Shown: positions 19,259-53,463, counted from the stretch's first letter. The stretch is DNA of 64,000 nucleotides from Octopus bimaculoides (GCF_001194135.2 NC_068995.1:36576460-36640459); one strand, 5' to 3'. Notes: a model not told the origin generated them from the sequence alone. Numbers and translations: made by a program.

Positions 19259-19364
19259 CTCAAAATATTCCAGGTAACCAGACTCTGGATCAAGTGAAAA
19301 CCATCGGAACTGCCATCCTTTCATCACATTAGTATATTTATTCAATTGGCCTTCCATTGGTTGT
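19259..19364 (-). CDS. OSBPL11: OSBPL10/11-like exon 3, start of PH domain ([35 protein letters not shown])
   Basis: Acceptor tctctcctttccag and donor GAG/GTGAGT. The KYTNxxKGWQxRWFxL motif is typical of ORP9/10/11 PH domains. Confidence 0.95.
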
Positions 19365-20310
19365 CTGGAAAGGAGAGAGAAAAGAAAGAATACTTAGTAA
19401 TTTGCTGAAACTAATATACAGAAAAAAACTATCACAGTATATTTGTATCATTTATTTTTGTTTTTTAATGGCTTACAAAGACAGAGAGGCTAATACAAGA
19501 ATACAAGGAAGATGAGATATAAACGCTACCACATACATTTATTCAAACTTTCTGTCTTTAATAAGTTCTGGAGGTGATTTTCACCATCCCTTAGCAATAT
19601 TTACAAAAAGATGTTTCAAGTAAACCATAAAAGAATAAAAAGACCTAGTAGCATTCATATACATGTCCACAACTGCTTTATAAGGGGGTTAAAAAAAACC
19701 CTCAAAAGTATATAAACAACTTCAAAGTCATTTTCAAAATCAGTTTCATGTGAGAATCACTCCAGGTGGAACTGGAACTTTTGACTAATACATTCCTTGC
19801 TGAAATTTCTACCAATAATACATTGGTATTAAATTAGTTATTTCTTTCAATTTCATATACATAAATCCAGATGCATTTCATCCTCAGTAACATCCATAGC
19901 AAATGTTGTCTCTGGACAAATACTGAGCAAATTGCCTTTCAACAATGTATTTACATTAAGATATAAAGATGGCTATAAACTTAAACTTCCCTCTGTATCA
20001 ATGCTTCACACACACAAAAGTATTTTTCATTTGTTTAATATAAAGAAACCAGTGATGAACCATTTATGATAAAGAGACATCAAAGGTGGCTGAGAGAAGC
20101 AGAGTTTTGATTAAATACATTAGTCCAAACCTAATTTCAAATCATAACCAAGGTGCAAGTGTAGCTGTGTGATAAGAAGTTTGCTTCCTAACCACATGGT
20201 TCCAGGTTCAGATCTACTGTGTGGCACCTTGGGCAAATGTCTTCTACTATAACACAGGGCTGACCAAAGCTTTGTGAGAGGACTTTGTAGATGGAAACTG
20301 AAAGAAAACT

Positions 20311-20347
<37 letters not shown>

Positions 20348-23300
20348 ACATGATTGGATGTCTTTGTGCTTGTCCTTACCACCAATGCCACTTGACAACT
20401 CATGATTTGTTTATGTCCCTACAAAAGAGACCAACAGAATAAGTACCAGATTCAAAACAAATAAGTACTGGGGTCAATTTCTTCAATTTAAGTCCTTCAA
20501 TGTGGTGCCCCAGCATTGCCACAATACAGTGACATAAACAAGTAAAAGATAAAAAAAAAAATCTTTAGTTCTCTCAATATCAATAAAATACAGTGATATT
20601 TCTAGGTTTGATTTGTCTTACTGTTCACTCTTCTTCATAAAATGGCTTGGTGTTCAGAGAAAGGCGATAATAAAAATAACAAATAAAATGAAACTGCATT
20701 AGAATGCTTTGCTTAAAAAAAATAATAGGCTGACCCTATAATAACTGAAGAAAACATAAAATATTAAACTGCATCCTTTGCTTTGAGATAAGCCATTGAA
20801 AGTAACAACAAAATATTCATTTTAGTTGATTACAGTGCATATCACAAAATGTTAGTTTTACAAGAGAATCATTGACTTTGTAACTTAATGCTTTCATAGG
20901 TCAAAAAGAGAAAGTTTTCTCAGAACAGTTTTATCCATGATGCCCATATTCTAAAAGACAGAATAGTAACAATAAAAACAATCGATATGATTGTTCCACT
21001 GAAACCAATTTCAAAGACAACTATGGCATCTTTCCAAACTACTCCATCTGTTCAGGCGTCAGCTATTTTACTTCATAAGCCAATAACAAACAAGATAGGA
21101 AAAAATTACTTCTCTCGTTATTAATAATTTACTTAATAAAACAAAAACAAAAAGTATAAAAAACAAAACTGATTTTTGCACATAAAAAAAGCTTCTTTGA
21201 GACTAAATTCCTTTATAACAAGAGAAACAACAAATTAAATGTTTATCTAGCCTCGATTGTCCATAAAATATTGAGGGAAAAACTATTTAATCATGTTGGC
21301 ATAGATTAAATGGTCTATTTAATCTATAACCAATATCACAGTTTCAACTATCTTAAGTTACTATGACCACATTTCCTGGCATTATTTACAACACAAAAAA
21401 AAATTGCTGAAGATAAGAGTGAGAGAGAAAAATGTTATAAGGATGGAGAAATAGAAAGACTAATAAGAATAGAAGCTGTAAACAATGAAAATATGGAAAG
21501 AGAGAGACAGACAATGTTGCAAGGAAATAAAAGAAAAGGGATACAAATGTAATACATTAAAAAAAAAAAAACATATAACAGTGAATAAGAATTAGTTTCC
21601 TGGTTAGCATGCAGTTGAAATTTTCAGTAATAAAAAGAACCATAAAACCACATTTTGATAAAAAAATATATTAATATTGGAATTTATATGAATCCTCTAA
21701 ACAGTGCAGAGTTTAATAACTAGTTTCTTTTAGTAAAAGTTGCATGCTCATAACTAATAGTAAGCAGCTTTATTATAGTATAGATGCCAGTAGCCAATTG
21801 TATTTCTAGCACTACTAAGTTCATAATCCTTAATTTCAACATGTTTACAAAACAAGACAACTTTTGCATCATTTCATTGCTATGTGTAAAGTGATTAACT
21901 GTCTGTAACAATATGTTCCATGAAGATAAAGTAACTAAAATTACATCAGTAAAAGCTAGCTATTTGCTAAGGAAGCAATGTAATCCTAAGTAATCATTAA
22001 ATATTGCTTTCCAGTCAATCATGCGTGCACATGCATGTGCGTGCACACTCTAACACACACACACAACTTATCAGCTTGTCAGACTATCTAGCACCGATTC
22101 TTTCATCTTTGGCCTAATGTCTATCTTACTTGAACTTTGCTGTGGTAAGTCTTTGGTTTATCTTTTCCAATATACATTTCCCTATTAAGATCTTGTTCTA
22201 AACAGTCTACATAAACCTATCAGCACAGTTCTAATCCGCTCAATGCCACTAAAATTTAAATATTCAATATTCAATCTTAGCAGCTTATCTAACTGATTGT
22301 TTTGTCTCTACTTTTTGATCAACATTCCTACTGTATTTAAACACCTAAAGAACAGTTCTTCCATGATTTCCTTTTACCATTTTGCTACTGTATTTCTATT
22401 GAAACACACAGCCTCTGTCTCAATTGGTTTTAAAAATAACAACAAATGTAGTGAAGTAATTTTGTTGTCATTAAGTTGGTGCTTGGCACACAAAGTGAAA
22501 TTTTAAAACAGAAAGTTTGTCTTATAGAACCAGTGGCATTCTCAGATGGTTTGGTTTCAGAAGGGTTTAACTGCTTTTTTCTCATATAAATATAAGCACC
22601 AACTCTTTGGAGCAAAGCATCTATTCAGAAAAAAAATTTCCAGCATATATATCCAATAGGTGCAGATGTGGTCTTGTGGCAAGAAGCTTGCTTCTCAACC
22701 ACATGGTTTTAGATTCAGTCCCACTGTGTGGCACTTTGGACAAGTGTCTTCTATCATAGCCATGGGACAACAAAAGCCTTGTGAGTGGATTTGGCAGATG
22801 GAAACTGAAAGAAGCCCATCATTATACATATATATATAACCCATGCCAGCATGGAAAACGGACGTTAAAGGATGATGATGATGATGATGATGATGATTAG
22901 TCAATTTGAGGATGTAATTTCCTCTTTAGGGATAGAGATCAGCTGGTGTTATCAATGAAATATTGAGAGAATTTTCACAATATATAGGGATAAAGTCAAA
23001 TTTACAGTTATATTTATATAAGAAAATAAAGAAAAAATATATAGTAGATACTTATTTTATTTGTATCACAATGAAAACAGCAAATCATTTAATACAAATA
23101 AAATTAAAAGAAACATAAATTAACAGAAAAAAGCATAAAAAGTGCCTTTACATTTCAATCTGGTCATTAGGTGAACAGAGTTTCAGATCTGCAGGATTTA
23201 AACCATGCTAAGAATTCTAGATGTAAAAAACCCCACAGGATAACCAGACATCATGAGGGCTACCTTGTACAAAAAGCTAATGCTTACATATTTTTTCAAA

Positions 23301-24777
23301 GTAATTCAAATTGGTGGTAAAAAACATACTGAATAACATAGATAAGGACTGCATATTCATATATCCAAGTTGTGATAAATTTCTCTCTATAATCAAATGT
23401 AGAATTAGTATCTTAATATTTTATTTAACATACATACCCTCCACCATATATTGATCTTAACCAGTAAAGATACAAATCTCTTTTTGAGTGAACAATTCTA
23501 AATTCCTACTTTAGTATACAATATTGCCTAATTTTTCTTAACCATAACTTTAAAATATTATAACCAATCTTTATTTTTTATATTTTATATCCTAAATAAC
23601 TTATGGCTTTTCTAGTTTCAATCTATTTAATATACCTCTATTTTATTCCCATTTCGTTATTTTTTCCCCTAGATAAAATTTATTCCTCTCTGTATTTTTT
23701 TCTACCTCTCACACTTCTCTTCAATTCATTCTATTAACATTTTCGCAATACCTTACCCTAATTACATAACTTCTCTCACAATCCCTAACCGTCTATATCC
23801 TTTTTGATTGATTACATAATGTCCCCCAATACCTATAACCGTCAATTTTTCTAATCCCTCATAGTCTTTTAGCATGATTTGATTAGCTAATACCTCCCCT
23901 ACTATGCCTTTGATGTCACATCTTTTCTAACAACTTAATGTTTACATTACTTGGATATATAAATATGCAGTCCTCAGCATGGCTGCAGTCAAATGACTGA
24001 AACAAGTAAAAGAATAAAATACACGATTGAGGTAGTATTTAATTAAAATAGCTAACTATGTAGCATACTTAATGTATACACACTTCGATAGACCAATTAC
24101 GGCAATATTTGCAATAAATACCAGTGGGAGGTGAAAAATTGCCCAGCAACCATCTGTTCTTATTGAACACTGCAGGACCAAATTTTCGTCTCCCTTATTG
24201 TGTTTTCAACAGAGCAAGTCCATAAGAAATGGACTTGTCTCAGGCAAAGTTGATTTGATGGAGGGAGGAGCTAATGCACAAGCACAAACATTTGATCACT
24301 ACAAATAAATCATCTGTGCCTGTTGTTCAGCAACAATTTGCAGAACTGAAGGTGCATGGTTCTGGTTAGAGCATCAAGTGTACTTCTCTGGACGACATAT
24401 TGTATACTTTTTAGCCAGGAACTTCATTTTACCATGCACCAATCTACGTAGTTGAAAATGAGTACCTGTTAATAGCTGGTGCAGCTCTTACCTTCTCTCC
24501 AGCTGTTGTATCCTCAAATACTCCACTGGGTTAAGTGTCAGAGGACTGAGAGGGTGTCAATGTCTAATCACAACAATATAGGGATCTAAACCAATTAGTG
24601 AATGCATGGGACTTTTTTGTGTGTATGCATGCATGCACATACTTCAGATAAAGACACTACATAGTTCACAGCTTCCCACAACCAAATTAAAAAGATTAGA
24701 ATTTCACTTTGATTCTAAAAAATACTCCAGCTCTGATCAGTTAACCTTCTAACACACACACACACAAATATATATAT

Positions 24778-24951
24778 ATCATCATCATCATCGTTTAACG
24801 TCCGCTTTCCATGCTAGTATGGGTTGGACGATTTGACTGAGGACAGGTGAAACCAGTTGGCTACACCAGGCTCCAATCTGATTTGACAGAGTTTCTACAG
24901 CTGGATGCCCTTCCTAACGCCAACCACTCAGAGAGTTTAGTGGGTGCTTTT

Positions 24952-24955
<4 letters not shown>
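24778..24955 (-). mobile_element. SINE family B ending in (GAT)n (representative). Others near 1495, 1945, 5395, 5790, 15450, 15960, 17860, 22840, 27330, 28100, 39890, 46960, 55262, 58015
   Basis: Recurrent CCAACCCATGCCAGCATGGAAAA.GGACGTTAAA.GATGATGAT motif. Confidence 0.75.
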
Positions 24956-25034
<79 letters not shown>

Positions 25035-28000
25035 CACACACATATATACACACACACTACACCAGAATACTACTCAGATAGTGACATTTTAGAGCATGTC
25101 AAGTTTTTAAATGCTGTGAACTTGACAAAGATGAAGCCAACTGTCATGGATCTGTTTCCATTACCATTTCCATTACTTCACAACTGATCAGTCCTGCCTT
25201 CTTCCAACTCCCAATAGCATATAAGTTAAATAACTACCATATTAACCCTAACTCTAACTTGTTTAAAGACATCATGGATATTACAGTTCTACCTGAGAGT
25301 AATTCTTATTCTGTTTCCTTTACTAACTTTGTCATGCCACTGAAAACCTGACATTATAGTTTTAATAGTATGACATTCATGACAACCATCTTAAATTAGA
25401 GGAATTAAGTATATGCAAATGAGAGAAAAATATCAGGATATTAATGCCAAAATACAAACAAGATATTAAGAGAGTGGTGGCCAGCTAATTTTAGTATGTT
25501 GATTGAAAAACAAAAGAGAGAAATTAGCAATCACATAACTATAATTGAGTTTGTGAGTGTTAAATTTAATGTAAAGAAACTAAAACATTGCAAAGAAGCT
25601 ACAAAAAAATATTAAAATTGAATGCTGCAACTATTGACCTTGGAAAGCATTTATCAAAATTCCTTGAGCAATATTTGCTGAGAGAAGGAGAATTTATGAA
25701 TACATGAATAGTCTGGCAGAAAAAAATTACAAAATGGAAAGTTAAATTAAAAAATAAAGCCATAGGCTTTTAAGAGGGAGACATATGTGACCTACTTTGA
25801 ATTATTAAAATGATACCAGATTAGCTATATCTACAGTCAAAATTCTAATTCATGACCTAGTCTCCAATATGAAATTAGAGAACAGCAAAATTAATAGAGC
25901 ACAGGTTTCCAAAGATCTCTCTGTTCTGTCCAAATGGTATGGATATTGCTCAATAGAATAATATATGCTGGGTGGAACTATACCATCAATTTAAAGAGAA
26001 AACTACACAAAAAAATATATATATATATTTATATATGTCCAGAGTTGAGATAAATTAATTCAGTTAAATAACATACAATCTAACAAATAAAATAACACAC
26101 AACTAAAATATATAGGTGAAGGTGTGGCTGTGTGGTAAGAAGCTTGCTTCCTAACCACATGGTTCCGGATTCAGTCCCCCTGTGTGGCACCTTGGGTAGG
26201 TATCTTCTACTACAGCCTTGGGCTGACCAAAGCCTTTGGATTTGGTAGACGGAAACTGAAAGAAGCCTATCATGTGTGTGTGTGTGTGTGTGTGTCTTTG
26301 TCCTCCACCAATGCTTGACAACTGGTGTTGGTGTGTTTACATCCCTATAACCTAACAGTTCCGCAAGAGAGATTAATAGAATAAGTACCAGGCTTTAAAA
26401 ATTAAAGCACTTGGGTCTATTCATTCAACTAAAAAAAAAAAAATTCAAGGCCATGCTCCAGTATGACCACAGTCTACTGACCACACAGCCACACCTTCAC
26501 CTAATATGCTATAAATTGCAAACCTATCCAATTCATATCAGCACATTACAAACAGTTGTTAGATATAATGCTAATAATGATGTATAGCTAAATATCATTT
26601 GTAAACACCCAATGGGGAACAATGATGGGTTTCCAGTGGAGTAACCAAATGGAATGGAATATTACTCAAAACAAACTTGGCCAAAGCACAGTCCTCATAG
26701 CCAAGTTCTTCCCAGTAGTTTCAAATCTGAAGTCAATTTAAGCCAAAGTTATACTGCTACTTCAACTCCAGCTGTAGTACAAAACTTCTACTAGAGCAAC
26801 CTTAACAACAGAGCAACAGCAATCTCTCAGTTCAGATGACTATGGTAAAATCTTCTGAGGTCTAAAGTAGTTCTGAAAACACCTATAATATACAACAGGT
26901 AGTCAGCTGAAAGATTAGGTGCATCCCACAAAACTTGTTCCAGTTATGTTTTCACCAAGCTAGACATCGATACTGCATGCACTGGTTAACTGTATGGTGA
27001 CATAGTGTGACAATTAAGGTATGTTTTATTCTTTCCATAATCCAGTCTATTTTTGTGTGTCTGCAGATTCTGGTTGTTGATAGCTATAGTAGAAAGATGT
27101 AATGTAATGAAGACTCAATCCGAGTGACGACAACTTCTGTCCCTCATCACAAAATTAGAACTTCCATCACAAACTTATGCAAGGTCACCCATGAGATGTC
27201 TTCACTACCATCTCTCTTTTCCAACTGGAGTAAACATGTACCTCCTGTACAGCAAGGTACCCGTTTCTGTCCCTCTATCATACTTTAACCTCTCGTTACC
27301 TCACATAAAGCCATCTTCTTCAATACTGTACCCCACCCAGTTGAGGAATCTTGTCTTGCGAGTTTCTTAGTGACCTCACTGGTGCCACTGCCATGTAGAA
27401 AAACACCCAGTACATTCTGTAAAAGGGTTGGTGTTAGGAAACCATGCCGAAGCATGGAGCTTGGCAGAATCCTTTGACTTGTAAGATGCTGTCAAACCAA
27501 CCAACCCAAACCAGCATGACACACAGACGTTAAATGATGATGTAAGAGCCACTAACTCATCACAGACTATTTAACTCTTGTAATACACTGTCTTATTAAA
27601 TATCTTCAGTGATAATTATTTCCCTAGGTTTTATAACTAAAATGGATTTTGTAATTAACAATTTTCTCGCTATTTTAATGAAAGAAAAGACATAGGTCTC
27701 ATTGTGATAATGCTAATGTAGAAATAATTTGAAGCAGTTGTATTCAAATTTTACCCATGTTTTTTGAATCTCAAAAAGGCTTTGGCTCAACCTCAACAAT
27801 GTTGAAATTATTCTGTAACTACTGTCAAAAAGTGTCACAAAACTAAAATACCAAGCCTTCCTTTTGTAACACTGCATTACTGTAACATTTATCTTAGCAG
27901 CTACTCCAAGTGCTAAATTTAGAGAAGCCCAACTCTAAAATTAACTACACTAGCAATGAAACACACAAAAAAAAAGTCTATTGTAAACAAGTCAAGTAAA

Positions 28001-28580
28001 AGATTTCCATTTCTATTGTGAAAGGTTTTATTTATTTATTTATTTACCTATCTCATCCTCCCCTTTCTGAAGAGGATTGGCACAGAGTTCTTTCCGAAGA
28101 GCTCTGCGCCAGTGCCACATAAAAAGCACCTATGCAGGCACTATGTAATAAGCACCCAGCACACGCTGTAAAGTGGTTAGCGTGAGGAAGGGCAACCAGC
28201 CATAGCAACCATGCCAAATTAGATAGAACCTGGTGCAATTCTACTGCTTGCCAGTTCTGGCCAAACTGTCCAACCCATGTGAGCATGGAAAACGGACGTT
28301 AAATGACGATATCACTGATTTATTACATTTCTTTTGGTGCGAATAACAAGAGAATGTTATTTGGCTTTTTCAATAATGGTTACATCCTTTGCCAATATAC
28401 ATTGGCAAAAACATACACACACACACAGTTTCTGGTGATCAGTTTCCAATCACAAGATAATGGTCAGCCTTAAGGCATGGTAGAAGACAATTCACAAGGT
28501 ATTGCACAGTTGACCTCAACGAAAACTACATAGTTGTAATGCTAACTTCCTAACTACACAGCCTTGTCTTCCTGACAAAG

Positions 28581-28622
<42 letters not shown>

Positions 28623-29840
28623 ATTAGATCAACAGTTGGAGGAAAAAGTGGATGCATTCTCCTGTAGAAATTTTTGGAAAATAAATTTATTAAAATGTCA
28701 AATTTCTCTTTAATAAGAAAAATACTGAATAAAGGAAAAAAAATTAGAAAAAGTCAGCTCTAGAATTCATGCTTCTTTGCTCACAACAGTACTACTTAGC
28801 TATTGATTTAAAAAAAAAACTTGGCTGTATTTGAGACAGGAATATAGATTCAATTAATATATTAATATCAATAATACTGTATAATGAAAGGTCAAAAATC
28901 AACATCAAGCAATCATCTATTTAATATAGGTTTTTATGTATGCACAATGTAGTCAGACCAGTTTGTCAAATTCCCAGTCACTTCAAGTTTGAAAACCAAG
29001 TTTCCTATTAATTTTACATTCTATAACTGACAGACTTCACCATTGAACTTTGCAAAATATTGTGTGTTAGCTTATATTTTCTAGCATACAAGTCAAATTT
29101 CTCAGACAAAAATTTTACAGCCAGAAAAAAAAGTAGGTTGATTAATACATCAAGACAGCTGTGGAGGACCACAAATTTCATGTGAAATGCAGCAGGATTT
29201 GGAAAGATAGTGATGATGTTTGAATGCTTACACTACACATTTATACTATATACTACATTGACTAGAATGCAAAAAAATACAGTATACAGAATGTAACAGT
29301 GAAATTTCCTTAGCATTTTAAAAGATGAATATTCTTTTCAGATGTCATCTAAGATACTATCATATCCAATTAATAAATTTTTCGGCATTGTACAGGCAGT
29401 TCATACTCATTTAAGATTAATTATGTCAATTTAATAATATCTATATCAAGAGTTTATTTGAAATGTTCTATAAACTTTTCTATATATTCATATATATTTA
29501 TACATAGATGTCAAAATGATGAAGACAATTATGTAACTAATATCATACAGCAGTCATTCACATAGTGAAACACAATTTCATAGATCAATGTTTAAGATAC
29601 ATATCCAATTGCAAAATAAATATTGATGAATATGGTTACAGGTTCAGTTTTCAGTCCCACTAAGTGGTATTTTGGGCAAGTGTCTTCTACCATAACACTA
29701 GCCCAACCAAAGCCTACTGAGTGAATTTGGTGGACAGAGACTGAAAGAAGCCCATCAGATATGTGTGTGTGTGTGCACACACATAATAGCTAATGCCTCC
29801 TTATCTTGACATCACATTATATTGGGCTGGAAACATTTTA

Positions 29841-31094: not shown

Positions 31095-31201
31095 TAGTTG
31101 TAAATGAATGTCACCGTCATACAGCAGTGTCCTCCACTGTCAACTTACCATGTAAAATATGTCTGGCCATGGGGAAATATTACCTTACTTGGAAACATGT
31201 A

Positions 31202-33757: not shown

Positions 33758-33806
<49 letters not shown>

Positions 33807-34060
33807 CCCCTTTTGAGACCAATAAAATAAACACTAGTTGAGCACTAGGGCTAATGTAAGCAACTAACTCCATCCAATTAAAATTGCTGGCTTTGTGCCA
33901 GAATTTGAAATCATTATTATAATTTCAAACGCTGCCAAGGTCAACTTTGCCTTTCAATCTTTCAGAATCAATGAAATAAGTACCAACTGAGCACAGGGAT
34001 TGATGTAATCAACTAAATTCATTCAGAATATTTCAATTAAGGTCTTAAAGAACCTTTATA

Positions 34061-40052: not shown

Positions 40053-40087
<35 letters not shown>

Positions 40088-43162: not shown

Positions 43163-43196
<34 letters not shown>

Positions 43197-43630
43197 NNNN
43201 NNNNNNNNNNNNNNNNNNNNNNNNNNNNNNNNNNNNNNNNNNNNNNNNNNNNNNNNNNNNNNNNNNNNNNNNNNNNNNNNNNNNNNNNNNNNNNNNNNNN
43301 NNNNNNNNNNNNNNNNNNNNNNNNNNNNNNNNNNNNNNNNNNNNNNNNNNNNNNNNNNNNNNNNNNNNNNNNNNNNNNNNNNNNNNNNNNNNNNNNNNNN
43401 NNNNNNNNNNNNNNNNNNNNNNNNNNNNNNNNNNNNNNNNNNNNNNNNNNNNNNNNNNNNNNNNNNNNNNNNNNNNNNNNNNNNNNNNNNNNNNNNNNNN
43501 NNNNNNNNNNNNNNNNNNNNNNNNNNNNNNNNNNNNNNNNNNNNNNNNNNNNNNNNNNNNNNNNNNNNNNNNNNNNNNNNNNNNNNNNNNNNNNNNNNNN
43601 NNNNNNNNNNNNNNNNNNNNNNNNNNNNNN

Positions 43631-43674
<44 letters not shown>

Positions 43675-45599
43675 GTGTGCATTTTGTTTTTACACTGCTT
43701 GACAACTGGTGTTGGTTTGTTTACATTGCTATAACTTAGCAGTTCAGCAAGAAGAGACTGATAGGAATAAGTACCAAGCTTATAAGTACTGGGATTGATT
43801 TGTTCAACAAAACCCATCAAGGCAGAGCTCCAGCTTGGCCACAGTCAAAAGACTGAATCAAGTGAAAGGAGACTAACAATCAACCAAAGTCTTTAAGAAA
43901 CAAACAGCTATTGGAGATCTATTTAAAATCTGTGAGAGAGAGAAAAATAGATAAATGAATGAATCAGCGTCCAAGAGTTGTTTACAAGAGACTCTTCCTT
44001 ACTATTAAGAGACAAAATCTTAATGGAAAAAGAGCAGAGTAAAAAAAAAAAAATTAATTAGCATCATACATTTTTCAAGTATTGATTGAAGCTATTTGCT
44101 TATTACATTCAATTAGTTTCCATGTCACTTCACTATGATTGGTACCTAAAGTGCAACTACTCATCTTCAATAAAACTCAATATATGCATCTTTATAGAAA
44201 ATGCATGATAGTTGTAGGAGAAGCTGTGTGGCTGAAAAGTTTGCTTCCCAACTATATGGTCTAGGGTTCAGTTCCTCTATGCAGCACCCTTAGGCAAGTA
44301 TCAGCCACTATAGCCCCAGGCCAACCACAGCCTTGTGAGTGGATTTGGTAGATAGAAACCCATTGTGTGTGTGTGTTTGTGTGCATGGGCATCAGTGTTT
44401 GTTCCCTACCACCCCTAAACAACCTGTTTTGGTTTGTTTACATCACTCATAACTTTGGAGTTTGGCAAAAGAAACTGGTAAGTACAAGGTTTAAAAAAAA
44501 AAGGACTGGGGTTCATTTGTTTGATTATTGCCTTCAAGGCAGTGCCCCAGCATGGCCACAACCCAATAACTAAAACAATTAGAAGATAAAAGAACTTGAA
44601 AGTAAAATGGCCCCTAAGATTAGGTTTGTGGGACCATCTGTTTATGTTGTTTAGCCCTGCACCCCCACCAAATCAACCCTGAGTGAATTATTATCAAAAG
44701 CATTCCAGCCAGGATCAGCTTTTCTGCCCTCATCCACCATTATCCAAAGTGCCTTTTTTAAGATGGTGGGGATTAATTTGTGGAAGATGTAACTGCTATT
44801 TGTAGTGGGTTGAGTAACAACATAGTAATTTCTTTAACACAGAAGCAAAATGTAGTTAATTTGAAGATAAGCTTGAAAAATGCATAATAATGTATCGAAC
44901 ATACTGTTGTTGTTGTTGGTATTATCAATAATATTAATATGATTTTTGTTTTTGTACAAACCTGTTGTGTGCATCACACTTACTTCAAAGAAGTGGCAAA
45001 GCGAAAGAGAGAAGGACAGAGAGGAAGTGAGAGTGAGAGAGTGAAAGAGACAGTGAGTAGTGATGGTGTTCGTTTTATGTTTTTAAATGTTTCAGAGAGG
45101 ACGGAAGAGTGAGAGAGAGAGAAAGAGAGTGGAAGAGACAGTGAGATATGTATGCACATTGTTAAATCAAAAGCAGGAGAGAAGAGTGACACAGAGGAAG
45201 TGAAAGAGAGAAAGTGAGAGAGAGAGAGTAGATACATAAATCCAAAGAAAAGTTCATAGATAGATACATAGACACAGCAAATATTGGCTGTCAATTTCAC
45301 TTTTCATTACCACACAAGGATAAAATTAACTCACAAATGGCTGAGTACTCCACAGACATGCATAACATTAACGTAGCTCTCCGGGAGATTCAGCCTCACA
45401 CAGAATATGACAAGGCTGGCCTCTTTGAATTACAGCTACAACTCCAAACATATACATATATATGAATGTATTTGTGTGTGTGCATAGTTTAGGTTAGTTA
45501 AAACATGTTTGAAATAATAAGTGTCGCGTGGTGGAAATAAACGTAATAACCAAATTTTCATTCATAAATCCATTCATTATTTTGTGCTTTTGCATTTCA

Positions 45600-46320
45600 A
45601 TTTGTACATTTGTTCCCAGAAATTTTCAACAACTGCACACCAGAAGAAATGGAAAAACGAGTAATTTTATCTCCTAAAAATTCTGACAGTCTTGCAATAA
45701 ATGAAAAAGTTCTTAATATTATACCAGAGGCACTTAAAATGTACTTAAGCACAGTTTCAGTGTCCTGCAATAATTAAGAGGAGGTTCAGAACTTCCTATT
45801 TGAATTCATAAACTCACTCACTCCATCCAGTATGCCTCCTCATCGCCTCAACTTAAAAGTAGGGGCTATTATAATGTTGCTAAGAAATCTTTCAATCAGT
45901 CAAGGATTAGGTAATGGAACTCACATGAAAGTGCAAAGACTTCATGAACATTGTGTAGAGGTATCACTGGTAACAGGCCCCAACAAAGGTCGTGCAGTTC
46001 TAATTCCCAGAATTAAACTTAGGAGACACAGGAAGCTCAAGTGATGCAAATATTCCATTCACACTAAACAGACTTCAGTTTCCACTTCGACTTGCATATT
46101 CAATGACAATTAATAAGGCTCAAGGGCAAACATTTGAAAAAGTTGGAATACATTTACCTCAAGTGGTATTTTCTCATGGCCAATTATATGTCACATTTTC
46201 AAGAGCACGAGCTATGAACAATATCAAATTAAGAGCTAACACTCAAATGGGATAACAGACAAGGCCAAAAACGTGATGTGAAATACACACAAAATATTGT
46301 CTACCATGAAGTACTGAGGA
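45600..46320 (+). mobile_element. Helitron RepHel C-terminal PIF1-like helicase fragment
   Basis: Peptides RVILSPKN, MPPHRLNLKVGAIIMLLRNL...GNGT, RLQFPLRLAYSMTINKAQGQT, VFSHGQLYVTFSR and terminal NIVYHEVL. Stops and frameshift present. Confidence 0.9.
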
Positions 46321-47830
46321 AGACCACCTCACCAGCTAGCATCACTACCACACCATCATTACACATTCACATTACATCTTTAAGATTGGGGAACCAGTTA
46401 GGGACTCACTGGATCTCTCTCGGCATATCAGCAAGCCACAAAACCGCACCAGCCAGCATCACCACTATAACTCCTTCTCTGCCTCTGTTTCCTTGCCAAC
46501 ACATAACTATTTATCACATTCTCTCTTCTATTAGATAGGCAGTTCTCAACCATTTTTTACCAAAGGATCCCTTTGACTCCTATTTTGCTTAGGTCGACCC
46601 CCATAGCTATTCAATGTTTAAAAAGATCTTATATTTTTATAATTAAATATTAGGACTTTGTATAAAAATTGTGCAAATGTTTTGTGTAATAAGGATGTGT
46701 AACCAATTTATTGCACATAAACTTTACTGTCTGAAGCGCAATTTTTTCATAGCACCTGAAAAATTACCATGGACCCCCAATTTATTACATTGCATCTGTG
46801 GACCCACAGGGTCCCTATGGACCCCTGTATTACATCCTCCCTTTCCATTCTATTTATTGGCTCATCTACCACACCCATATTCATCTATTCACCCTTTCAG
46901 TCATGCTTGCTTTGAATGGAGATAGGGGAAGCCTTGAGTAGAAAGGACTTCATTCTTGTAGGTGAACAAGGCAATCTTACTAGTGCTGGAGCCATAATGA
47001 AATGCACTATGTACACTACAAAGTGCTTTAAGGAAGGGTATCCAGCCATCAAAACCCTGCCAAATGAAAGGTACCAGAATGAAATGGTCCTCCAACCTTT
47101 AAAAGGCAGTAACTCTGAATAGGGGTTGATTTGGACTGTGACAATCCATCCAACAAATGCCAGTACGGAAAGCAGACAAAATAATGAAAGAATAATGAAA
47201 TAAAGAGAAATCAGCCTACTAAAAGTTGTAAATAATCTCTAAAGTATGACACAAACCTTACACAATCTCACTGGCAAAATGCCTGATTTTACAAAAATTT
47301 CAAATGTATAGACATAAACATAGAATACTTTATTTTGTTAAACTTGGAAAGTAAGATAATTAAAACAATATAGTTAATGGTAAAGTGGGCACCAGCATAC
47401 TGAATGTAGTAAGCCAAAGAACCTTAATTAGATAAATAGATTAATTAATATAGTTAATGTTTGACTTGAATTGTTACAACTTCATGCTTGACAAGGAAAC
47501 ATAAGCAGGTAAGGAGTTGAGGTTAGAAAAGAAAGTGTTTAAAGGTGATTAGAGAGACAGTGTGAGTATTTAATTAGAGGCTACCTCTAATTAAATAGGC
47601 TTCTCCCAGATGTCACATGAAGTATATTTAATCAGGGGTGGCATTAAATGAGAAAAGCAAGTTCAAACAAGGAGCATGGCCTTTGGAGTAGTTTATAAAA
47701 ACAGTACTATGAGTTTTTTTTTTTTCAATGCAATGTAATATTGGGGTAGAGTATTTTTAAGGTAAATACTTTTAAAGAAAGGGCTATGCACTAAGTGAGG
47801 AAAGGAACTTATGCAGGAGGTAATGCTTAA

Positions 47831-48051
47831 CCCTTTCGTTACTGTATTTATTTTGAGATGCTCTGTGTTTCTTTCAATTACTTTAAATGTAACAAAGAAT
47901 TTAGTAAAATAACTTAGTTATCATTCAGCTAGTGTTAGGAATATAAATTATGACTAAGGTTTAGTGGAAGATTTTAATTAAAAACTTATGAAAACAAGAC
48001 ATTTGTACTACAGAGCCAGAGCCGGTTTCAGCAGGGTTGGTAACGAAAGGG
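47831..48051. mobile_element. piggyBac-type MITE
   Basis: Perfect 12-bp TIR CCCTTTCGTTAC / GTAACGAAAGGG, with TTAA on both sides. Confidence 0.85.
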
Positions 48052-49461
48052 TTAAAGCTGAGGTTTCCAAATATTGTATTGCTTGACTTAGCAAACAGAT
48101 ACAATTAGATGGTGTATTGGTGAATAATGGTTTTAAATATATTATGTACATAAATAGGAGTTTACATTAAGACTGATCCTTCCTGTGTCTCCTAAAATGC
48201 AACTTCGAAAGAGAGCATAGTATATTGGCCAGACACACTTCAGTGGTTATTTTTTGTAGATTTTAACTAATTACAAAAGTATATTTGGGGTTGTTTATGA
48301 TTACATGCATTAGCTTTGAGATGCTGAAAGTGAGTTTGAGAGATTGATAGTTAACAAAATAAAAGACATTAGTTAGTTTGGGAGATGGAACACACTGTTG
48401 TGAACTTCCATAGGTTGGGGTACATTCCAAACAAACAAAATATTGAAGAATTAGAGGCAATAAAATGTAGCTCAAAAGTGGTCTGGAAAACTTCCAGAAC
48501 TAACCACTTTGTTGATTTGAAGTACCTGGAAGAATTTTTACACCTGATGACTGTCAAGCAGAATACTTGATTCTTTCTTTTCATTTGTATAACCAATAGG
48601 AATAAGTATCTGATCTTAATAGGGCTGATTAACTTCATTGGACATCTCAAAATATATAACAGTGAGGAAACAAAGAACTTTATCACACTAGTGCCTGACA
48701 TGACACAAATATTTACTTTCATTACCATTTATAATGATGTAACTACCGACCAAGTGACTAAACTGTTTCACCTAGTCTTTTAGTCCTGCCTCTGTTATTT
48801 TGTAGAAAGTAGAATTTTCTTCACTTGGTTGTTTCACTCACTAATTCAGCCACTTAGTCATAATAGTGGCTTCAAATTTTGATACAAGGCCAGCAATTTG
48901 GGGAGAGGGAATAAGTTGATTATCAACTCCAGTGCTCCACTGGTACTTATTTTATTGACCATGAATGGATGAAAGGCAAAGTTGACCTCAGTGGAATTTC
49001 AACTCAGAGCATATAGATGGATGAAATGCCGCTAAGCATTTTGCCTGGCATGCTAACGATTCTGGCAGCTTGCCGACTTTCACTTAGTCATAACATTACT
49101 ACACAAGTGTACTATATTGATCTTTTGTTCAGCTAAAAACACTTTCATGCTTTTAATTTTTCTATGTCAACTCGAATCCACTTTCCATTCATAAAATGTT
49201 TTAACCACACAGGGTTAAGTAATCATATAAAAAACACAAAAAAACATATACAACCCACTTTTAGTTTCCCCAATTCTGTCAAGCAGTTATTACGTTAAAG
49301 CTATTTTAATATAATGATGTGATAAACTTGGTTTATCATATGTATAAGCCCATTAAGATTTGAACTCTGCACTGCAAACTTCCAGCCTACTAATGTCAAC
49401 ACCTCCCCATATCAATTTAGAGCTAGGCAGATTGAGTCAGTAAATACTAAATACATTAGAG

Positions 49462-49687
49462 CAGCATTTCTCAACCAGAACCTTAGGGTTCCACAAAAGG
49501 TTCCTAGGGGTTCCACGTGAAAGAGTGAGATAAGCTAATGCTAATTTCATGATCATAATATTACTATACATGCACAACATATTGGTTATTGTAATATAGA
49601 CATCATCCTATCTAACATATTATGTTATCAAAAAATATAACCGACATATATATATANNNNNNNNNNATGTTATCAAAAAATATAACC

Positions 49688-49733
<46 letters not shown>

Positions 49734-49865
49734 ATATTTACCACATGAACTACGATGAAAAATAATTGAGAAAGATATAGTATATAGTTTTTTTGTGCAG
49801 GGTTTCTTTGAGACATGCAATTTATTTTAAGTGTTATGCAAGGGTAAAAAGGTTGAGAAACACTG
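49462..49865. mobile_element. hAT-type MITE
   Basis: TIRs cagcatttctcaacc / ggttgagaaacactg, exact 8-bp TSD CATTAGAG. Confidence 0.85.
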
Positions 49866-52800
49866 CATTAGAGGGAGAATTCAAGCACTGATATTTTAGG
49901 CAATAGAGTACCATGTTAACTTATCTAGCTACAGTTACTTTCATAAAGTATCCCATTCATGTATGATGCAAGTGTCATTAAGATGCCCAGTAAAGTTTGT
50001 TAAATGTAAACAGGTATATCCTCTATACAAACAGAAATGTTTTAAATCATTCATCAAATCAGAGCCTCTGCGCTTAATATGAACTACCTTTAGAGTTAAT
50101 TAGGTCAGGTAATTAACATAACTGATCTACTAATTCTGTTAATCCTTTGTAAATGCACAAACAATCAGAGATTGATTTCCAATCCTTTAGAATACTATAA
50201 AAATGGTTTGACAACATAGTGCATGACTGCTTAAACTAGTATGATAGAGTTGTACTATGAATGTACTTATTAAATGTTAATTATTAACAAAACTGATTTA
50301 TATTCTCTATCTTCCCCTAAATACAAGTACAGCATACATTTGTTGTTGCAATTAACTAGCAAATAATACTGAATAATACTGAATCCCCTCAAAATTATAT
50401 TTATCTATACCGATATAATCTACATTTATTTATAATTATATAAATATTCATATCTATGCAAATTTATACATATTACTGTTTCATTTCATAATTGCAAAAA
50501 AAAAAAAAAATAATAATTTGCTAAATGTCCATTGAACATATAGTAAGCATTTGTTTTACCTTGCTTGCATAAGTTGAACACCTGTGNNNNNNNNNNNNNN
50601 NNNNNNNNNNNNNNNNNNNNNNNNNNNNNNNNNNNNNNNNNNNNNNNNNNNNNNNNNNNNNNNNNNNNNAAAAAAAAAAAAAAAAAAAAAAATTTTTAAT
50701 ATAAAAAACAGAAGGTCACATTATATTCAGGATTACACTGTACTCAAGTAAACAAATAAATATGCTAAGTACAAAACTAATTTAGAAATATGCTTTATGA
50801 ATGAATACTCTTTAACAGCACTGGTTTATTGAACCACCATACATGTAGTTCTGTTGAACAATAGTTTTGTTACTGAATACCTATTGTAAAATTATTTTTG
50901 AAATATTTTAGAGCATAGGCACAGGTGTTGCTGTGTGGAAAGAAGTTTGCTTCCCAACCACACAGTTCAGGATTCAGTCCCACTGTGTGGCACCTTGGGC
51001 AAGTATCTTCTGCTATAGCCTCAGGCTGACCAAAGCCTTTTGAGTGGATTTGGTAGATAGAAACTGAAAGAAGTCGTGTGTGTGCCTTTGTACCTGTGTT
51101 TGTCTCCCACCACCACCACCACCACCGCTTGGCAACCAGTGCTGGTGTGTTTGTCACCGTAACTTTGTGGTTTGGCAAAAGAGACCGATAGAATAAGTAC
51201 TAGACTTTAAAAAAAAAGCACAGGAGTCGATTCATTTGATTAAAAATTCTTCAAGGTGCTGCCCCAGCATGACCGACTGAAACAAGTAACAGATACAAGA
51301 TTGAAGTTCCTTATACGAAATAAATTTCCTAGAAATTCTTTGTACTATTTATTTTGATTTGTACATAATTTTAGCCAATCAGTTTCCAGTTCATTCAATC
51401 TGTTCCTAATTGTCATGTTGCAAGTTCAATTCTTAACGGGGCCTCTAAATCTTTAGAGATAACGGGGAAGAGATTGTTGATTGAACCAGTTCAAAGACTA
51501 CAAAAAAGAAATTACTGAATGGCTAAAAGTCCTTCTCAGTTCAACAACTGACAGCTGTAATTAATATGTAAATAAATTGAATATAGCATTCACTTAGTCA
51601 CAATCTACAAAAAGAAAAAAGTATTCTCAAGAATTAATGACTCATTTCTTAGATCAGTCATCTAAAGTTGAAGCATTCAAAAATAATCAGCAATAACTTC
51701 CTTTATGGGTAATCATATTACACACAGATTACAGTGAAATATTTCACGCTACGTTTATTGCAGTTATTTAATTTAACATCAATAATCCATGTTCACTACA
51801 AATCAACACTGACAGTTTCATTAAAGAATTAGTAAGTAGTGATATTAGAAAGTATAGATGTTAATTAAACTCAACTGCTTACCACTAAACAATATACTAA
51901 AAACGCCTAGCGGCACAAAAACTAGGGTAATGAAGTTTCCCTTTAATTTCAATCGTTAAATAAGTGTAAAAACAAAAGTATATTTTGATTATCAAATAAC
52001 TAATCCTCTGGATTTTATCAAATTTAATTGTTAATAAGAAAAGTTTTGTGGTAATCTGTAGATAATGAAATATGCGAGAGAAAGAAAAGTGATGTGTTTT
52101 ATAATGAATGAATGGATTTACTAAAGCTGAGAGACTAGACAGTCTGTTGTGCTATTCAGTGCCAGTTTCCGTCTAAACTGAATAAATAAACACTATTAGT
52201 CAAAACCAATGAAAGCGTCTATGTGGTAGCTCGACTGCTAGAAACAGCAGCAACATTATCTCAGATCATACACTAACGTCTTTATAAAAAAAAAGATGCA
52301 AATGCACTATATTACGAGATGGTCACGGACAGAACGTCTTTGATAATCGGTTTGCACGATCAGCAGTAAGAGCTACAATAACATTAATACACAGGAAAAA
52401 AAAATAGAGAAAGAAATGTGTGTGAGAGTAGATCGTAGCAGAAGACTAATATGAAAGAGAAGAGTACCAAGTGGAGCGCATCGATATAAGTAGACTAAGA
52501 ATTATATCGCAAGTTGTGTAGTGCAAATAAACAACGAAAATATGCATGAGAAAAAAAGCGATAAAAAAAATATTTTCACGACCAATAACCGAAGTAGTAG
52601 TAGTGTGGTGATAGAAATTATGATGATTTCATAGGGCTATAACTTCCAATAGGATACCATGAAGTAAACATCTGACTTCTCAATACATAAATTAGCTACG
52701 GTACTAAAATTTATCTTCAAACAAAAACTAAGTTGCGAATAAATGTGACAGTTCAAAATGTAAAGCAGAAAATAAACGAGAACTTAGAAGTATTGGACAA

Positions 52801-53358
52801 TTGGTAAAAAGTTAGTGGAATAATGAAACATTGTAAAATTTATGTTTGCACTCGTAATCACGCCACTTTTTAATGTGTTGACAGCAACTTGCTGTCTGCG
52901 AGAGACATCGAGGTGGAGGAGGGGCACAACATTCCATGGAGAATAACAAACAGTTGGAGATATCATCACCAAAGATTTGATTTACGCATTTAGCTTTCAA
53001 AGAATTCTATCAAGCAATTTATACATTATAAATTACTCGTTTCGTAAGTACTGGACAAAAGGAGTGTGTATTAATAATGAGTGCCACAGAATGATCATAG
53101 CTACCAGCAATCAACTAATATGAATGGGTCGAAAAAAAAAGCAAAACAAAAGATAATACCAAAAATAATAACATTATCAATGTTTATAAATAAAATAAAA
53201 ACAAGTGATATTAAATAGACCGTAAAAAGAATCTTACACTGAACGGGAAAAATTCATACGAGAGAGAAAGAAAATTACAGTACGGTATTATTTACCCTTT
53301 GATAAGAAATAATTTATACTAATCGAATAAGATAATGATATTCTTCGGTTTAACTTAC

Positions 53359-53463
53359 CTTGGCTCGCTGTACAACTGCCATTACCTGAAGCTTTTCAGC
53401 TTCCGTAAGCGCCGAAAGATCAGGTAATGCATAAGGTAAATTGTTTTTGTCTACAGCTGCCAT
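53359..53463 (-). CDS. OSBPL11: OSBPL10/11-like gene, coding exon 1 (MAAVDKNNLPYALPDLSALTEAEKLQVMAVVQRAK), RabBD/SHD1-like helix
   Basis: ATG in AAAATGGCAGC context, 35 codons, strong donor AAG/GTAAGT (phase 0). Lies in a CpG-retaining promoter-like region. PDLSxLTExE...VMAVVxRxK resembles the RIM/Piccolo/Slp N-terminal helix. In-frame upstream ATGs at 53475 and 53508 are alternative starts. Linkage to the PH exons is inferred from phases. Confidence 0.8.

What the first reader, a model, noticed from the sequence alone, without database searches (positions are those of the whole stretch)
19259..53463. Rab-effector (RIM/Piccolo/Slp-type SHD1) helix spliced in frame onto an ORP10/11 lipid-transfer protein
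Seen: exon 1 (53359-53463, phase 0 out), microexon 37784-37815 (0 in, 2 out) and PH exon 19259-19364 (phase 2 in) give [68 protein letters not shown]. All six splice sites are canonical, and I found no other promoter-like CpG-rich region between them. Established: PDLSxLTEEEx(3)IxxVxxRxxE begins the RabBD of RIM, Slp/Slac2, rabphilin and Piccolo, and in RIM1 this helix carries Rab3 binding. Vertebrate OSBPL10/11 have only a low-complexity N-terminus before the PH domain. Inference: this ORP may be recruited directly by a Rab3/8/10/27-type GTPase to secretory or synaptic vesicle membranes, coupling lipid exchange to vesicle traffic. It has no zinc finger or SGxWF (SHD2) part, so it would be a minimal Rab-binding module. 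I cannot tell whether this is already annotated in molluscs.
Basis: partly seen in the sequence, partly recalled or inferred. Interest (0 to 1): 0.85.

Follow-up and report, generated by a model that had tools for sequence, protein, structure and literature searches.

The report
Rab-effector-like helix on ORP11 orthologue
The start of this mollusc-type ORP10/11 lipid-transfer gene encodes a short helix, conserved from sponges to hemichordates but absent from the two fish ORP11 models I could read, that matches the Rab-GTPase-binding helix of rabphilin and Slp proteins, which suggests an overlooked and still untested way of steering lipid exchange to Rab-marked membranes.

Summary
Three minus-strand exons (53359-53463, 37784-37815, 19259-19364) have canonical AG/GT sites. 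They join in frame to three further PH-domain exons and give a 151-aa N-terminus. All assembly gaps lie in introns beside microsatellites. This is not a species-specific fusion. The same helix-PH-ORD order occurs in 'ORP11-like' proteins of gastropods, chelicerates, a hemichordate, flatworms, a nematode, cnidarians and sponges, and the intron after '...QRAK' is also seen in sponge-like contigs. So it is ancestral and already present in RefSeq models such as Pomacea XP_025086490.1. Several species also have helix-less isoforms, and two fish ORP11 models lack the helix.

The Rab-effector resemblance is real. A profile of 24 ORP helices finds rabphilin-3A first in the PDB (E 0.013), then Slp2a and melanophilin. 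Nine of 24 helices hit the first 27 positions of Pfam FYVE_2. hhalign against verified rabphilin and Slp2a SHD1 gives 95.8% probability (P 7.5e-9). Reversed-sequence controls are empty. There is no zinc finger and no SHD2. Rab binding remains an inference, and I found no paper making this link. A side find: unnamed proteins with 9-12 tandem copies of the same helix.

The parts
53464..54100 (-). Putative promoter and 5'UTR of the helix-containing isoform. It holds a block conserved with a related species that includes a CACGTG motif, and an in-frame upstream ATG at 53475 (MEAK-).
   Evidence: CpG o/e is about 1.0-1.2 against a window mean of 0.26, and the stretch is non-repetitive up to about 54050. 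Blocks conserved with L001 are shown. Promoter function is inferred.
53359..53463 (-). Exon 1 CDS (35 aa): MAAVDKNNLPYALPDLSALTEAEKLQVMAVVQRAK. It encodes the N-cap and first half of the SHD1-like helix.
   Evidence: Sequence and splice site. tblastn to Pomacea residues 1-35, E 3.8e-8. 97% identity to a related species against 73-78% in the flanks. The exon end after RAK is also seen in sponge-like contigs.
37816..53358 (-). Intron 1 (15.5 kb). It contains gaps 43197-43630, 49657-49666 and 50587-50669, and a CpG-rich repeat copy at about 40588-40973.
37784..37815 (-). Microexon (32 nt, phase 0 in, 2 out): EFETVEERNR(R). It encodes the second half of the helix.
   Evidence: Sequence. Unique best of 715 candidates. 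Helix-less isoforms of Limulus, Ixodes and Ptychodera begin at or beside the equivalent EF[ED] segment.
19365..37783 (-). Intron 2 (18.4 kb). It contains gap 33485-33753.
19259..19364 (-). Exon 3: (R)[35 protein letters not shown], the first strands of the PH domain.
   Evidence: The same acceptor position appears in other species' read-through ORFs P0002 and P0003.
17539..17586 (-). Exon 4: KEEHKKQRPRGALHLA (PH domain).
16368..16449 (-). Exon 5: GAVISPSDEDSQTFIVHAANGELYRLK (PH domain).
14487..14566 (-). Exon 6: AIDARERQHWVDKLRATAEYHTANLAQ (C-terminal helix of the PH domain).
   Evidence: AF2 predicts a helix at residues 128-150.
6280..6394 (-). Probable later exon in the linker/coil region (...PFKDVKEYLFQAAEYSSNLGEKIT). 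This assignment is weak.
   Evidence: tblastn to Pomacea residues 214-238 gives only E 0.15; AG/GT flanks are present. The ORD exons lie beyond the window start.

Best explanation
Shown: the window holds the 5' third of the single ORP10/11-type (PS/PI4P-exchanger class) lipid-transfer gene of a mollusc-like genome. Its first two coding exons encode residues 1-46. The AlphaFold2 model puts a single helix at residues 21-45, ending three residues before the ORP11-type PH domain. This helix is the ancestral N-terminus of metazoan ORP10/11 orthologues. It matches, in register, the first helix (SHD1) of the Rab-binding domains of rabphilin-3A and Slp2a: L-[TS]-x-x-E-[KR]-x-x-[LIV]-x-x-V-[ML]-x-[RK]-A-x-E-F-x-x-x-E. 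The invariant and near-invariant residues E23, V27, V30, A34, F37 and E41 lie on one face of the helix.

Inferred: that face docks onto the switch/interswitch surface of a GTP-bound exocytic-branch Rab (the Rab3/8/10/27 group). The helix and the adjacent phosphoinositide-binding PH domain would then act as a two-signal detector (Rab-GTP plus PI4P) that places the ORD on Rab-marked post-Golgi or secretory membranes.

Also inferred: other species have helix-less isoforms that use a different first exon, so promoter choice would switch this targeting on or off. The two fish ORP11 models I could read lack the module. From memory, human ORP10/11 lack it too.
For: Gene model and frame.

PH identity: phmmer against human ORP11 PH (2D9X) gives 9.1e-37. 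Foldseek's top hit is 2D9X at E 2.6e-13 with rmsd 1.1 A.

Conserved architecture: single-stretch alignments cover helix plus PH in full-length PH + Oxysterol_BP proteins. These come from Pomacea, Bulinus, Stegodyphus, Limulus/Tachypleus, Ixodes, Ptychodera, Macrostomum, Trichuris, Hydractinia, Exaiptasia, Oscarella and Halichondria. One is an Oscarella pearsei transcript assembly, and two are unnamed contigs barely longer than their ORFs, so probably transcripts.

AF2: helix at residues 21-45 with pLDDT about 85; PH domain pLDDT above 95.

One-sided conservation: E23 24/24, V30 24/24, A34 23/24, L/I/V27 24/24, all within +/-40 degrees on a helical wheel.

Similarity to SHD1:
- The ORP-helix profile against 177,635 PDB sequences puts rabphilin-3A 1ZBD_B first (E 0.013). 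Slp2a-Rab27A fusions follow at E 0.28-0.7 and melanophilin 2ZET_C at E 1.9.
- Nine of 24 helices hit Pfam FYVE_2 positions 1-27, best E 2.2e-4.
- hhalign of the ORP helices against tool- or paper-verified rabphilin and Slp2a SHD1 gives 95.8% probability, P 7.5e-9, over 29 columns without gaps.
- Reversed-sequence controls: no Pfam family is hit by more than one member, the best PDB E is 0.78, and hhalign gives 1.3%.

Literature:
- A 28-residue Slp2a SHD1 fused to Rab27A was crystallised, leaving the pocket that normally takes the effector's SHD2 WF motif free (PMC8864489).
- The SHD1 helix contacts Rab switch 2, and a choanoflagellate SPIRE protein with a FYVE_2 domain pulls down with GTP-locked Rab8 (PMC11231147).

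The motif also occurs on its own, 9-12 times, inside low-complexity linkers of unnamed proteins. That fits a portable module that binds a partner in trans.
Against: - No binding data or complex model could be produced here.
- The FYVE_2 scores (13-20 bits) are below Pfam's gathering score of 27.2. The same helices also touch unrelated models (ComX, DUF7167, DUF3826) at E 1e-3 to 0.04, so the motif carries little information. Part of it (L-[ST]-x-x-E) is a generic helix N-cap.
- The zinc finger and the SHD2 WF/SGAWFF element are absent. For Rab27A, mutating the Rab residue that contacts the SHD2 WF motif strongly inhibits effector binding, so that element matters for some Rab-effector pairs.
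- The AF2 model places the helix three residues from the PH domain. I could not inspect whether its conserved face packs on the PH domain.
- There is no transcript evidence for this species.
- The ORD of this gene lies outside the window.
Confidence: 0.5

Rival explanations
1. The helix is a conserved trans-acting docking motif, but its partner is not a Rab. It could be another small GTPase or an unrelated adaptor. The likeness to SHD1 would then reflect shared ancestry with a changed partner, or convergence of N-capped amphipathic helices.
For: One-sided conservation and the stand-alone tandem copies call for a partner but do not identify it. SHD2 and the zinc finger are missing. Short-helix Pfam matches are promiscuous.
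Against: The profile-profile match to verified SHD1 is gap-free over 29 columns at P 7.5e-9, and the reversed controls are clean. The profile's PDB hit list (21 sequences at E up to 10) contains three different Rab-binding-domain proteins, including the top hit.
Confidence: 0.25
2. The helix acts within the protein. It would pack on or gate the PH domain (autoinhibition), or mediate dimerisation, as the N-terminal helical domain does in SKAP-Hom (1U5E).
For: The AF2 model leaves only a three-residue linker between helix and PH domain. Helix pLDDT is about 85 and pTM 0.73. SKAP-Hom helix+PH appears among the structural neighbours at rank 23. Helix-less isoforms exist, as expected for a regulatory add-on.
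Against: The same motif occurs many times without any PH domain in P0024 and P0058. In human ORP9/ORP11, dimerisation maps to the coils between PH and ORD, not to the N-terminus (PMC11302984). I could not read the model coordinates, so packing is untested.
Confidence: 0.17
3. Gene-model artefact. Exons 1-2 would belong to another transcript or be unused here, and the ORP transcript would start elsewhere.
For: There is no RNA evidence from this species. Helix-less isoforms exist in other species.
Against: The composite is colinear with 12 or more orthologues, including transcript-derived ones. The exon boundaries are conserved. Exon 1 is under purifying selection. The microexon is a unique candidate. 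No other gene-like ORF lies in the interval.
Confidence: 0.04
4. The helix is a membrane-binding amphipathic helix that assists the PH domain directly on lipid.
For: It sits immediately before a lipid-binding PH domain and is amphipathic.
Against: By my count from the sequence, residues 19-46 carry six acidic and six basic side chains (net charge 0). The hydrophobic stripe is narrow and contains an invariant Glu and an invariant small Ala. That fits a protein interface better than insertion into an anionic membrane.
Confidence: 0.04

Closest known systems
SHD1 / first helix of the Rab-binding domain (Pfam FYVE_2, PF02318) of rabphilin-3A, Noc2, RIM, Slp and Slac2 proteins
   Same: N-terminal position and a helix of about 25-34 residues. 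The register L-[TS]-x-x-E-x-x-x-[ILV]-x-x-V-[MLI]-x-R-[AD] matches, followed by an acidic continuation. hhalign gives 95.8% and rabphilin is the top PDB hit.
   Different: There is no zinc finger and no SHD2 (SGAWFF/WF). The helix is followed directly by a PH domain, and the host is a lipid-transfer protein rather than a C2, PDZ or myosin-binding effector. It scores below the Pfam gathering score.
Zinc-finger-less Rab-binding domains of JFC1/Slp1 and Slp2-a
   Same: They show that the zinc finger is dispensable. [quoted passage not shown] A 28-residue Slp2a SHD1 was fused to Rab27A and crystallised in PDB 7OPP (PMC8864489).
   Different: Slp1 and Slp2-a still carry SHD2 directly after SHD1. 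The ORP helix has nothing equivalent.
ORP1L-Rab7
   Same: An ORP is recruited to a Rab-marked organelle by an N-terminal module placed before its PH domain. The papers are cited in PMC10243569; the details are established knowledge.
   Different: The module is an ankyrin-repeat domain, unrelated in fold and sequence. The subfamily is ORP1/2, not ORP10/11.
Human ORP11 / ORP10 (OSBPL11 / OSBPL10)
   Same: The PH domain is 55% identical to human ORP11 PH. Orthologues carry Oxysterol_BP domains. The architecture is PH-coils-ORD without FFAT, and the human ORP9-ORP11 dimer exchanges PS for PI4P at ER-Golgi contacts (PMC11302984).
   Different: In the two fish models read, the ORP11 N-terminus is short or low-complexity (...WQYSD.ME...GYLMKYTN) with no SHD1-like helix. 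From memory, the human N-termini are similar.
SPIRE-box of SPIRE actin nucleators
   Same: It is another SHD1-type helix outside the classical effectors, and the host protein binds Rab8 even in choanoflagellates (PMC11231147). This shows the module is older than animals.
   Different: In SPIRE the helix is still part of a complete FYVE_2 domain with its zinc finger.

Membership tests
OSBP-related proteins (ORP), ORP10/11 clade | ORP-type PH domain closest to ORP10/11 | tested here: met
   Pfam PH E 1.5e-11. phmmer against human ORP11 PH 2D9X gives 9.1e-37. Foldseek's top hit is 2D9X at 55% identity.
OSBP-related proteins (ORP), ORP10/11 clade | OSBP-related lipid-binding domain (Oxysterol_BP, EQVSHHPP signature) | not testable with these tools
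   The ORD exons lie beyond the window start. The colinear orthologues P0008, P0191, P0023 and P0097 have Oxysterol_BP at E 1e-66 to 1e-70.
OSBP-related proteins (ORP), ORP10/11 clade | Coil region between PH and ORD (the ORP9 dimerisation site) | tested here: inconclusive
   One candidate exon (6280-6394) matches Pomacea residues 214-238 at only E 0.15.
Rab-binding domain, Pfam FYVE_2 (PF02318) | Score at or above the Pfam gathering score for the domain | tested here: not met
   12.9-14.3 bits against a cut-off of 27.2. Only model positions 1-27 or 1-38 of 118 are matched.
Rab-binding domain, Pfam FYVE_2 (PF02318) | SHD1 helix (first helix, the Rab switch-contacting element) | tested here: met
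   hhalign against verified rabphilin and Slp2a gives 95.8%, P 7.5e-9. Rabphilin is the top PDB hit. Nine of 24 helices hit the start of FYVE_2. Reversed controls are negative.
Rab-binding domain, Pfam FYVE_2 (PF02318) | Zinc finger (eight Cys) | tested here: not met
   There is no cysteine in residues 1-48. The PH domain starts at residue 49.
Rab-binding domain, Pfam FYVE_2 (PF02318) | SHD2 element (SGAWFF / WF motif) | tested here: not met
   Nothing lies between the helix and the PH domain. The KGWQFRWF at residues 61-68 spans the loop and second strand (E63-71) of the PH fold. It is shared with CERT and FAPP PH domains that lack the helix.
Rab-binding domain, Pfam FYVE_2 (PF02318) | GTP-dependent binding to a Rab | not testable with these tools
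   It needs pull-downs or a multimer prediction. The structure tool takes one chain only and accepts no outside sequences.

The most novel reading that the evidence does not exclude
A zinc-finger-less, SHD2-less SHD1 helix is an ancient, portable Rab-GTP-binding motif. On this reading the ancestral animal ORP10/11 used it together with its PH domain to read Rab plus PI4P. That would tie PS/PI4P exchange directly to exocytic carriers. Alternative first exons would regulate it, and vertebrates would have lost it. The same motif, repeated 9-12 times or more in unnamed giant proteins (P0024, P0058), would make a multivalent scaffold for Rab-marked vesicles.
Probability: 0.3. Interest if true: 0.8.

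Novelty: new variant of a known kind. Interest (0 to 1): 0.6.

Why it matters
ORP10 and ORP11 are studied almost only in mammals. There they have no known Rab input and reach membranes through their PH domain and through ORP9 (PMC11302984). If the ancestral protein carries a working one-helix Rab-binding module, three things follow.
- Rab control of non-vesicular lipid exchange would be older and more widespread than the ORP1L-Rab7 case.
- The minimal requirement for a Rab-binding domain would shrink to one helix of about 25 residues placed next to a lipid-binding domain.
- Alternative first exons would give a simple switch for where PS/PI4P exchange takes place.

All of this can be tested directly with a 150-residue fragment and point mutants. 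If it is wrong, what remains is a strongly conserved, unannotated, one-sided helix in a major lipid-transfer family whose partner is still unknown.

Tried and rejected
- A single-sequence PDB search with the helix found nothing. Only the family profile did.
- The word-indexed protein database returned mostly exon-sized fragments and no full-length eukaryotic ORPs. The full-length orthologues came from the exhaustive representative search.
- I considered KGWQFRWF as a hidden SHD2. I rejected it because it is part of the PH fold (the loop and second strand in the AF2 model) and is shared with helix-less PH domains.
- I considered the CpG-rich patch at 40.6-41.0 kb as an internal promoter. I rejected it because it is a repeat copy, 91% identical to 62238-62634.
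- The in-frame ATG further upstream (MRIC...) is unlikely to be a start. A 2-bp indel in the related species breaks that frame, whereas MAA... is the start shared with Pomacea and other gastropod-like contigs.
- The Pfam hits of the tandem-helix proteins to ComX and DUF7167 are additive repeat artefacts.
- Pfam found nothing for the retroelement-looking intronic ORFs.
- Literature searches pairing SHD1 or rabphilin with oxysterol-binding, ORP10 or ORP11 found no paper making the connection. The OSBP evolution paper does not mention the helix in the passages I searched.
- I could not identify the species. I could not read model coordinates to see whether the helix packs on the PH domain. A helix-Rab complex prediction was not possible with the single-chain tool.
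That figure is a lead only. The 95.8% figure uses only sequences verified by a tool or a paper.
Full report
**1. The observation**

I read the three proposed exons on the minus strand. They are as described.
- Exon 1: ATG at 53463 to the GTAAGT donor after 53359.
- Microexon: 32 nt, 37784-37815, behind a T19-GCAG acceptor, with a GTAATT donor.
- PH exon: 19259-19364.

Joined, they give [81 protein letters not shown].

Using the Pomacea orthologue as a guide, I found three more PH exons: 17539-17586, 16368-16449 and 14487-14566. All have AG/GT sites. The six exons form an open 453-nt reading frame of 151 residues. A weak candidate for a later exon lies at 6280-6394. The lipid-binding domain must lie beyond the window start.

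**2. The assembly gaps**

All four gaps flagged by the program lie inside introns 1 and 2. Each abuts a microsatellite or homopolymer, and none is within 2.7 kb of an exon. The reading frame does not cross any gap.

The composite is colinear with Pomacea XP_025086490.1 over residues 1-82: one aligned stretch, 69% identity, E 1.7e-25, and a one-residue length difference. No coding exon is hidden in a gap.

**3. More than chance**

- Among 715 AG...GT segments of compatible phase in the 34-kb interval, the proposed microexon scores best against the homologous peptide (24 against 17 for the next).
- Contigs from a related species (L001-L003, about 80% identical overall) are 97% identical across exon 1 but 73-78% in the flanking promoter and intron.
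- The window is strongly CpG-depleted (mean o/e 0.26). Exon 1 sits in the only non-repetitive stretch with o/e near 1.1 (about 52.1-54.1 kb).
- No other gene-like ORF lies between the exons.
- No transcript from this species could be found, so the splice junctions rest on homology.

**4. What the gene is**

The PH domain matches the solved human ORP11 PH domain (2D9X) at 9.1e-37 by sequence. It is also the top structural hit for the AlphaFold2 model: E 2.6e-13, rmsd 1.1 A, 55% identity.

The exhaustive search of 1.84 billion representatives with the composite returned many proteins that align as one stretch across both helix and PH domain. The named ones are all 'oxysterol-binding protein-related protein 11(-like)' or generic names:
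- Molluscs: Pomacea canaliculata, Bulinus truncatus.
- Chelicerates: Stegodyphus, Limulus, Tachypleus, Ixodes, Euroglyphus.
- Hemichordate: Ptychodera flava.
- Flatworms: Macrostomum; Schistosoma and Paragonimus carry a truncated helix.
- Nematode: Trichuris muris.
- Cnidarians: Hydractinia, Exaiptasia.
- Sponges: Oscarella, Halichondria.

The full-length proteins have PH plus Oxysterol_BP domains. One is an Oscarella pearsei transcript assembly. Two others are unnamed contigs barely longer than their ORFs, so they are probably transcripts.

Exon-sized ORFs from many genomes end exactly after '...QRAK' and read into the intron. These include a large group sharing the MHSGD start of the sponge Halichondria. 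Helix-less isoforms in Limulus, Ixodes and Ptychodera begin at or beside the equivalent EF[ED] microexon segment, and Pomacea X5 and X6 start at the PH exon.

The helix is therefore the ancestral N-terminus of animal ORP10/11 orthologues. It is carried on an alternative first exon, and it is already present, though unremarked, in annotated mollusc proteins.

Two fish ORP11 models have a short N-terminus (...WQYSD.ME...GYLMKYTN) without it. From memory, human ORP10 and ORP11 are similar.

**5. The helix**

AlphaFold2 (24-sequence alignment, mean pLDDT 88.7) gives one helix at residues 21-45 with pLDDT about 85. A three-residue linker follows, and then the PH domain.

Across 24 orthologues, the conservation is as follows:
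- E23 and V30 are invariant.
- A34 is 23/24.
- Position 27 is always L, I or V.
- Position 31 is always M, L, V or I.
- Position 33 is R or K in 23/24.
- F37 and E41 are strongly conserved.

E23, V27, V30, A34, F37 and E41 lie within +/-40 degrees on a helical wheel. This is a single conserved face, as expected for a protein-binding surface.

**6. Is it an SHD1 helix?**

- The single sequence scores weakly against Pfam FYVE_2 (E 0.05-0.12, model positions 1-27 or 1-38, below the gathering score).
- A profile of 24 ORP helices with the PH domain removed, searched against all PDB sequences, puts rabphilin-3A (1ZBD chain B) first at E 0.013, aligned to the start of its Rab-binding domain. Slp2a-Rab27A fusion chains follow at E 0.28-0.7 and melanophilin (2ZET_C) at E 1.9.
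- Nine of the 24 helices individually hit the start of FYVE_2 (best E 2.2e-4). No other family is hit by more than three.
- With the 24 sequences reversed, no Pfam family is hit by more than one member and the best PDB E-value is 0.78.
- hhalign of the ORP profile against only the two SHD1 sequences verified here gives 95.8% probability and P 7.5e-9 over 29 ungapped columns. The two are rabphilin and Slp2a residues 5-32 from PMC8864489. The reversed control gives 1.3%.
I treat that figure as a lead only.

I conclude that the helix is an SHD1-type helix. It is not a complete FYVE_2 domain. Residues 1-48 contain no cysteine, and there is no SHD2. The KGWQFRWF motif belongs to the PH fold.

**7. 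How it most likely works**

The literature supports Rab binding by an SHD1 helix with little help from other elements.
- Insertion scanning of JFC1/Slp1 mapped Rab8A binding to SHD1, while insertions in SHD2 and the C2 domains largely retained it. The same paper describes the 34-residue rabphilin helix as directly involved in Rab3A binding (PMC2018616).
- A 28-residue Slp2a SHD1 fused to Rab27A was crystallised, leaving the pocket that normally takes the SHD2 WF motif free (PMC8864489).
- The SHD1 helix of melanophilin makes a major contact with switch 2 of Rab27B. A choanoflagellate SPIRE protein with a FYVE_2 domain pulls down with GTP-locked Rab8 (PMC11231147).

My best reading is that the ORP helix docks on a GTP-bound exocytic-branch Rab. 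Together with the adjacent PH domain it would give two-signal targeting of PS/PI4P exchange. PMC11302984 describes that exchange activity for the human ORP9-ORP11 dimer. Promoter or first-exon choice would then turn the targeting on or off.

The gene structure, the conservation and the SHD1 likeness are shown. Rab binding, the identity of the Rab and the two-signal model are inferred.

**8. Rivals**

- A different trans partner. The likeness to SHD1 does not name the ligand.
- An intramolecular or dimerisation role. The linker is only three residues, and SKAP-Hom provides a helix+PH precedent.
- A gene-model artefact.
- A membrane-inserting helix.

The occurrence of the same motif 9-12 times without any PH domain (see section 10) argues against a purely PH-packing role. 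The balanced charge and the invariant Glu and Ala argue against membrane insertion.

**9. Novelty**

Protein models carrying the helix already exist in RefSeq, so the sequence itself is not new. I found no paper linking ORP10/11 to SHD1, rabphilin or a Rab-binding domain. The OSBP evolution paper does not mention an N-terminal helix in the passages I searched.

Pfam does not annotate the helix in the full-length proteins. Only Oscarella lobularis shows FYVE_2, at E 0.0013 and below the cut-off.

I class this as a new variant of a known kind: a minimal SHD1 module in a new host architecture. ORP1L-Rab7, which uses ankyrin repeats, is the functional precedent.

**10. Side observation**

The composite query also pulled out two unnamed proteins, P0024 (798 aa) and P0058 (973 aa). 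They are built from 9-12 copies of [DE]LDLSGL[ST]EEE[KR]xxILSVMxKA[ED] separated by low-complexity linkers. On contig L004 a second long open frame downstream of P0024 carries four more copies. I did not identify the organism or the full protein.

Noticed in passing
L004:1437-3833 and L004:5428-8833 (Logan SRR13325274); proteins P0024 and P0058: These are unnamed proteins made of 9-12 tandem copies of the same ~25-aa helix motif ([DE]LDLSGL[ST]EEE[KR]xxILSVMxKA[ED]) in low-complexity linkers. A second open frame on the same contig has four more copies. No real Pfam domain was found. The ComX and DUF7167 hits are repeat artefacts, and FYVE_2 positions 1-24 score E 5.6e-4 for P0058. If the motif binds Rab-GTP, this could be a multivalent scaffold.
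   Followed up: partly
orthologues P0159/P0160 (Pomacea X5/X6), P0163 (Limulus X2), P0186 (Ixodes X2), P0038 (Ptychodera X2): RefSeq isoforms replace the helix exon with another first exon that joins at the microexon or at the PH exon. The helix is therefore an alternative 5' module in at least three phyla. Whether this window has such an alternative first exon is unknown.
   Followed up: partly
window 53475 and about 53520-53620 (minus strand): An in-frame ATG lies four codons upstream (MEAK-MAAV...) in good Kozak context. There is also a promoter-proximal block conserved with the related species that includes a CACGTG motif. A further upstream in-frame ATG (MRIC...) is not frame-conserved in the related species.
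   Followed up: partly
window 40588-40973 and 62238-62634: This is a pair of 91%-identical, oppositely oriented, CpG-rich repeat copies. More diverged copies lie at about 45323-45442 and 18896-19052. They are the only CpG-rich patches besides the exon-1 island.
   Followed up: partly
window, many sites, e.g. 54050-54200, 50917-51054, 22646-22794, 20143-20278, 26114-26236, 12728-12829, 4936-5065: A short interspersed repeat of about 130-150 bp, 75-81% identical between copies, occurs 15 or more times in the introns and upstream region. It translates as ...HLPKVPHSGTEPGTMWLGSKLL.... Microsatellites ((TA)n, (GA)n, (TG)n) flank every assembly gap.
   Followed up: no
window 10886-11656 (minus) and 3-356 (minus): These intronic ORFs look to me like retroelement fragments. 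One is a GIY-YIG-like segment (...CVYSIPCSYGRLYKGKTCRLLKIRVEEH...), and there are RT-like pieces. Pfam gave no hit at E <= 0.01, so this is unverified.
   Followed up: partly
P0226, P0227 and vertebrate read-through ORFs P0235 etc.: Vertebrate ORP11 genes appear to have an intron inside the PH motif (...GWQY|RFFVLNN), where this gene has one continuous exon (19259-19364). The PH exon structure therefore differs between vertebrates and this lineage.
   Followed up: no
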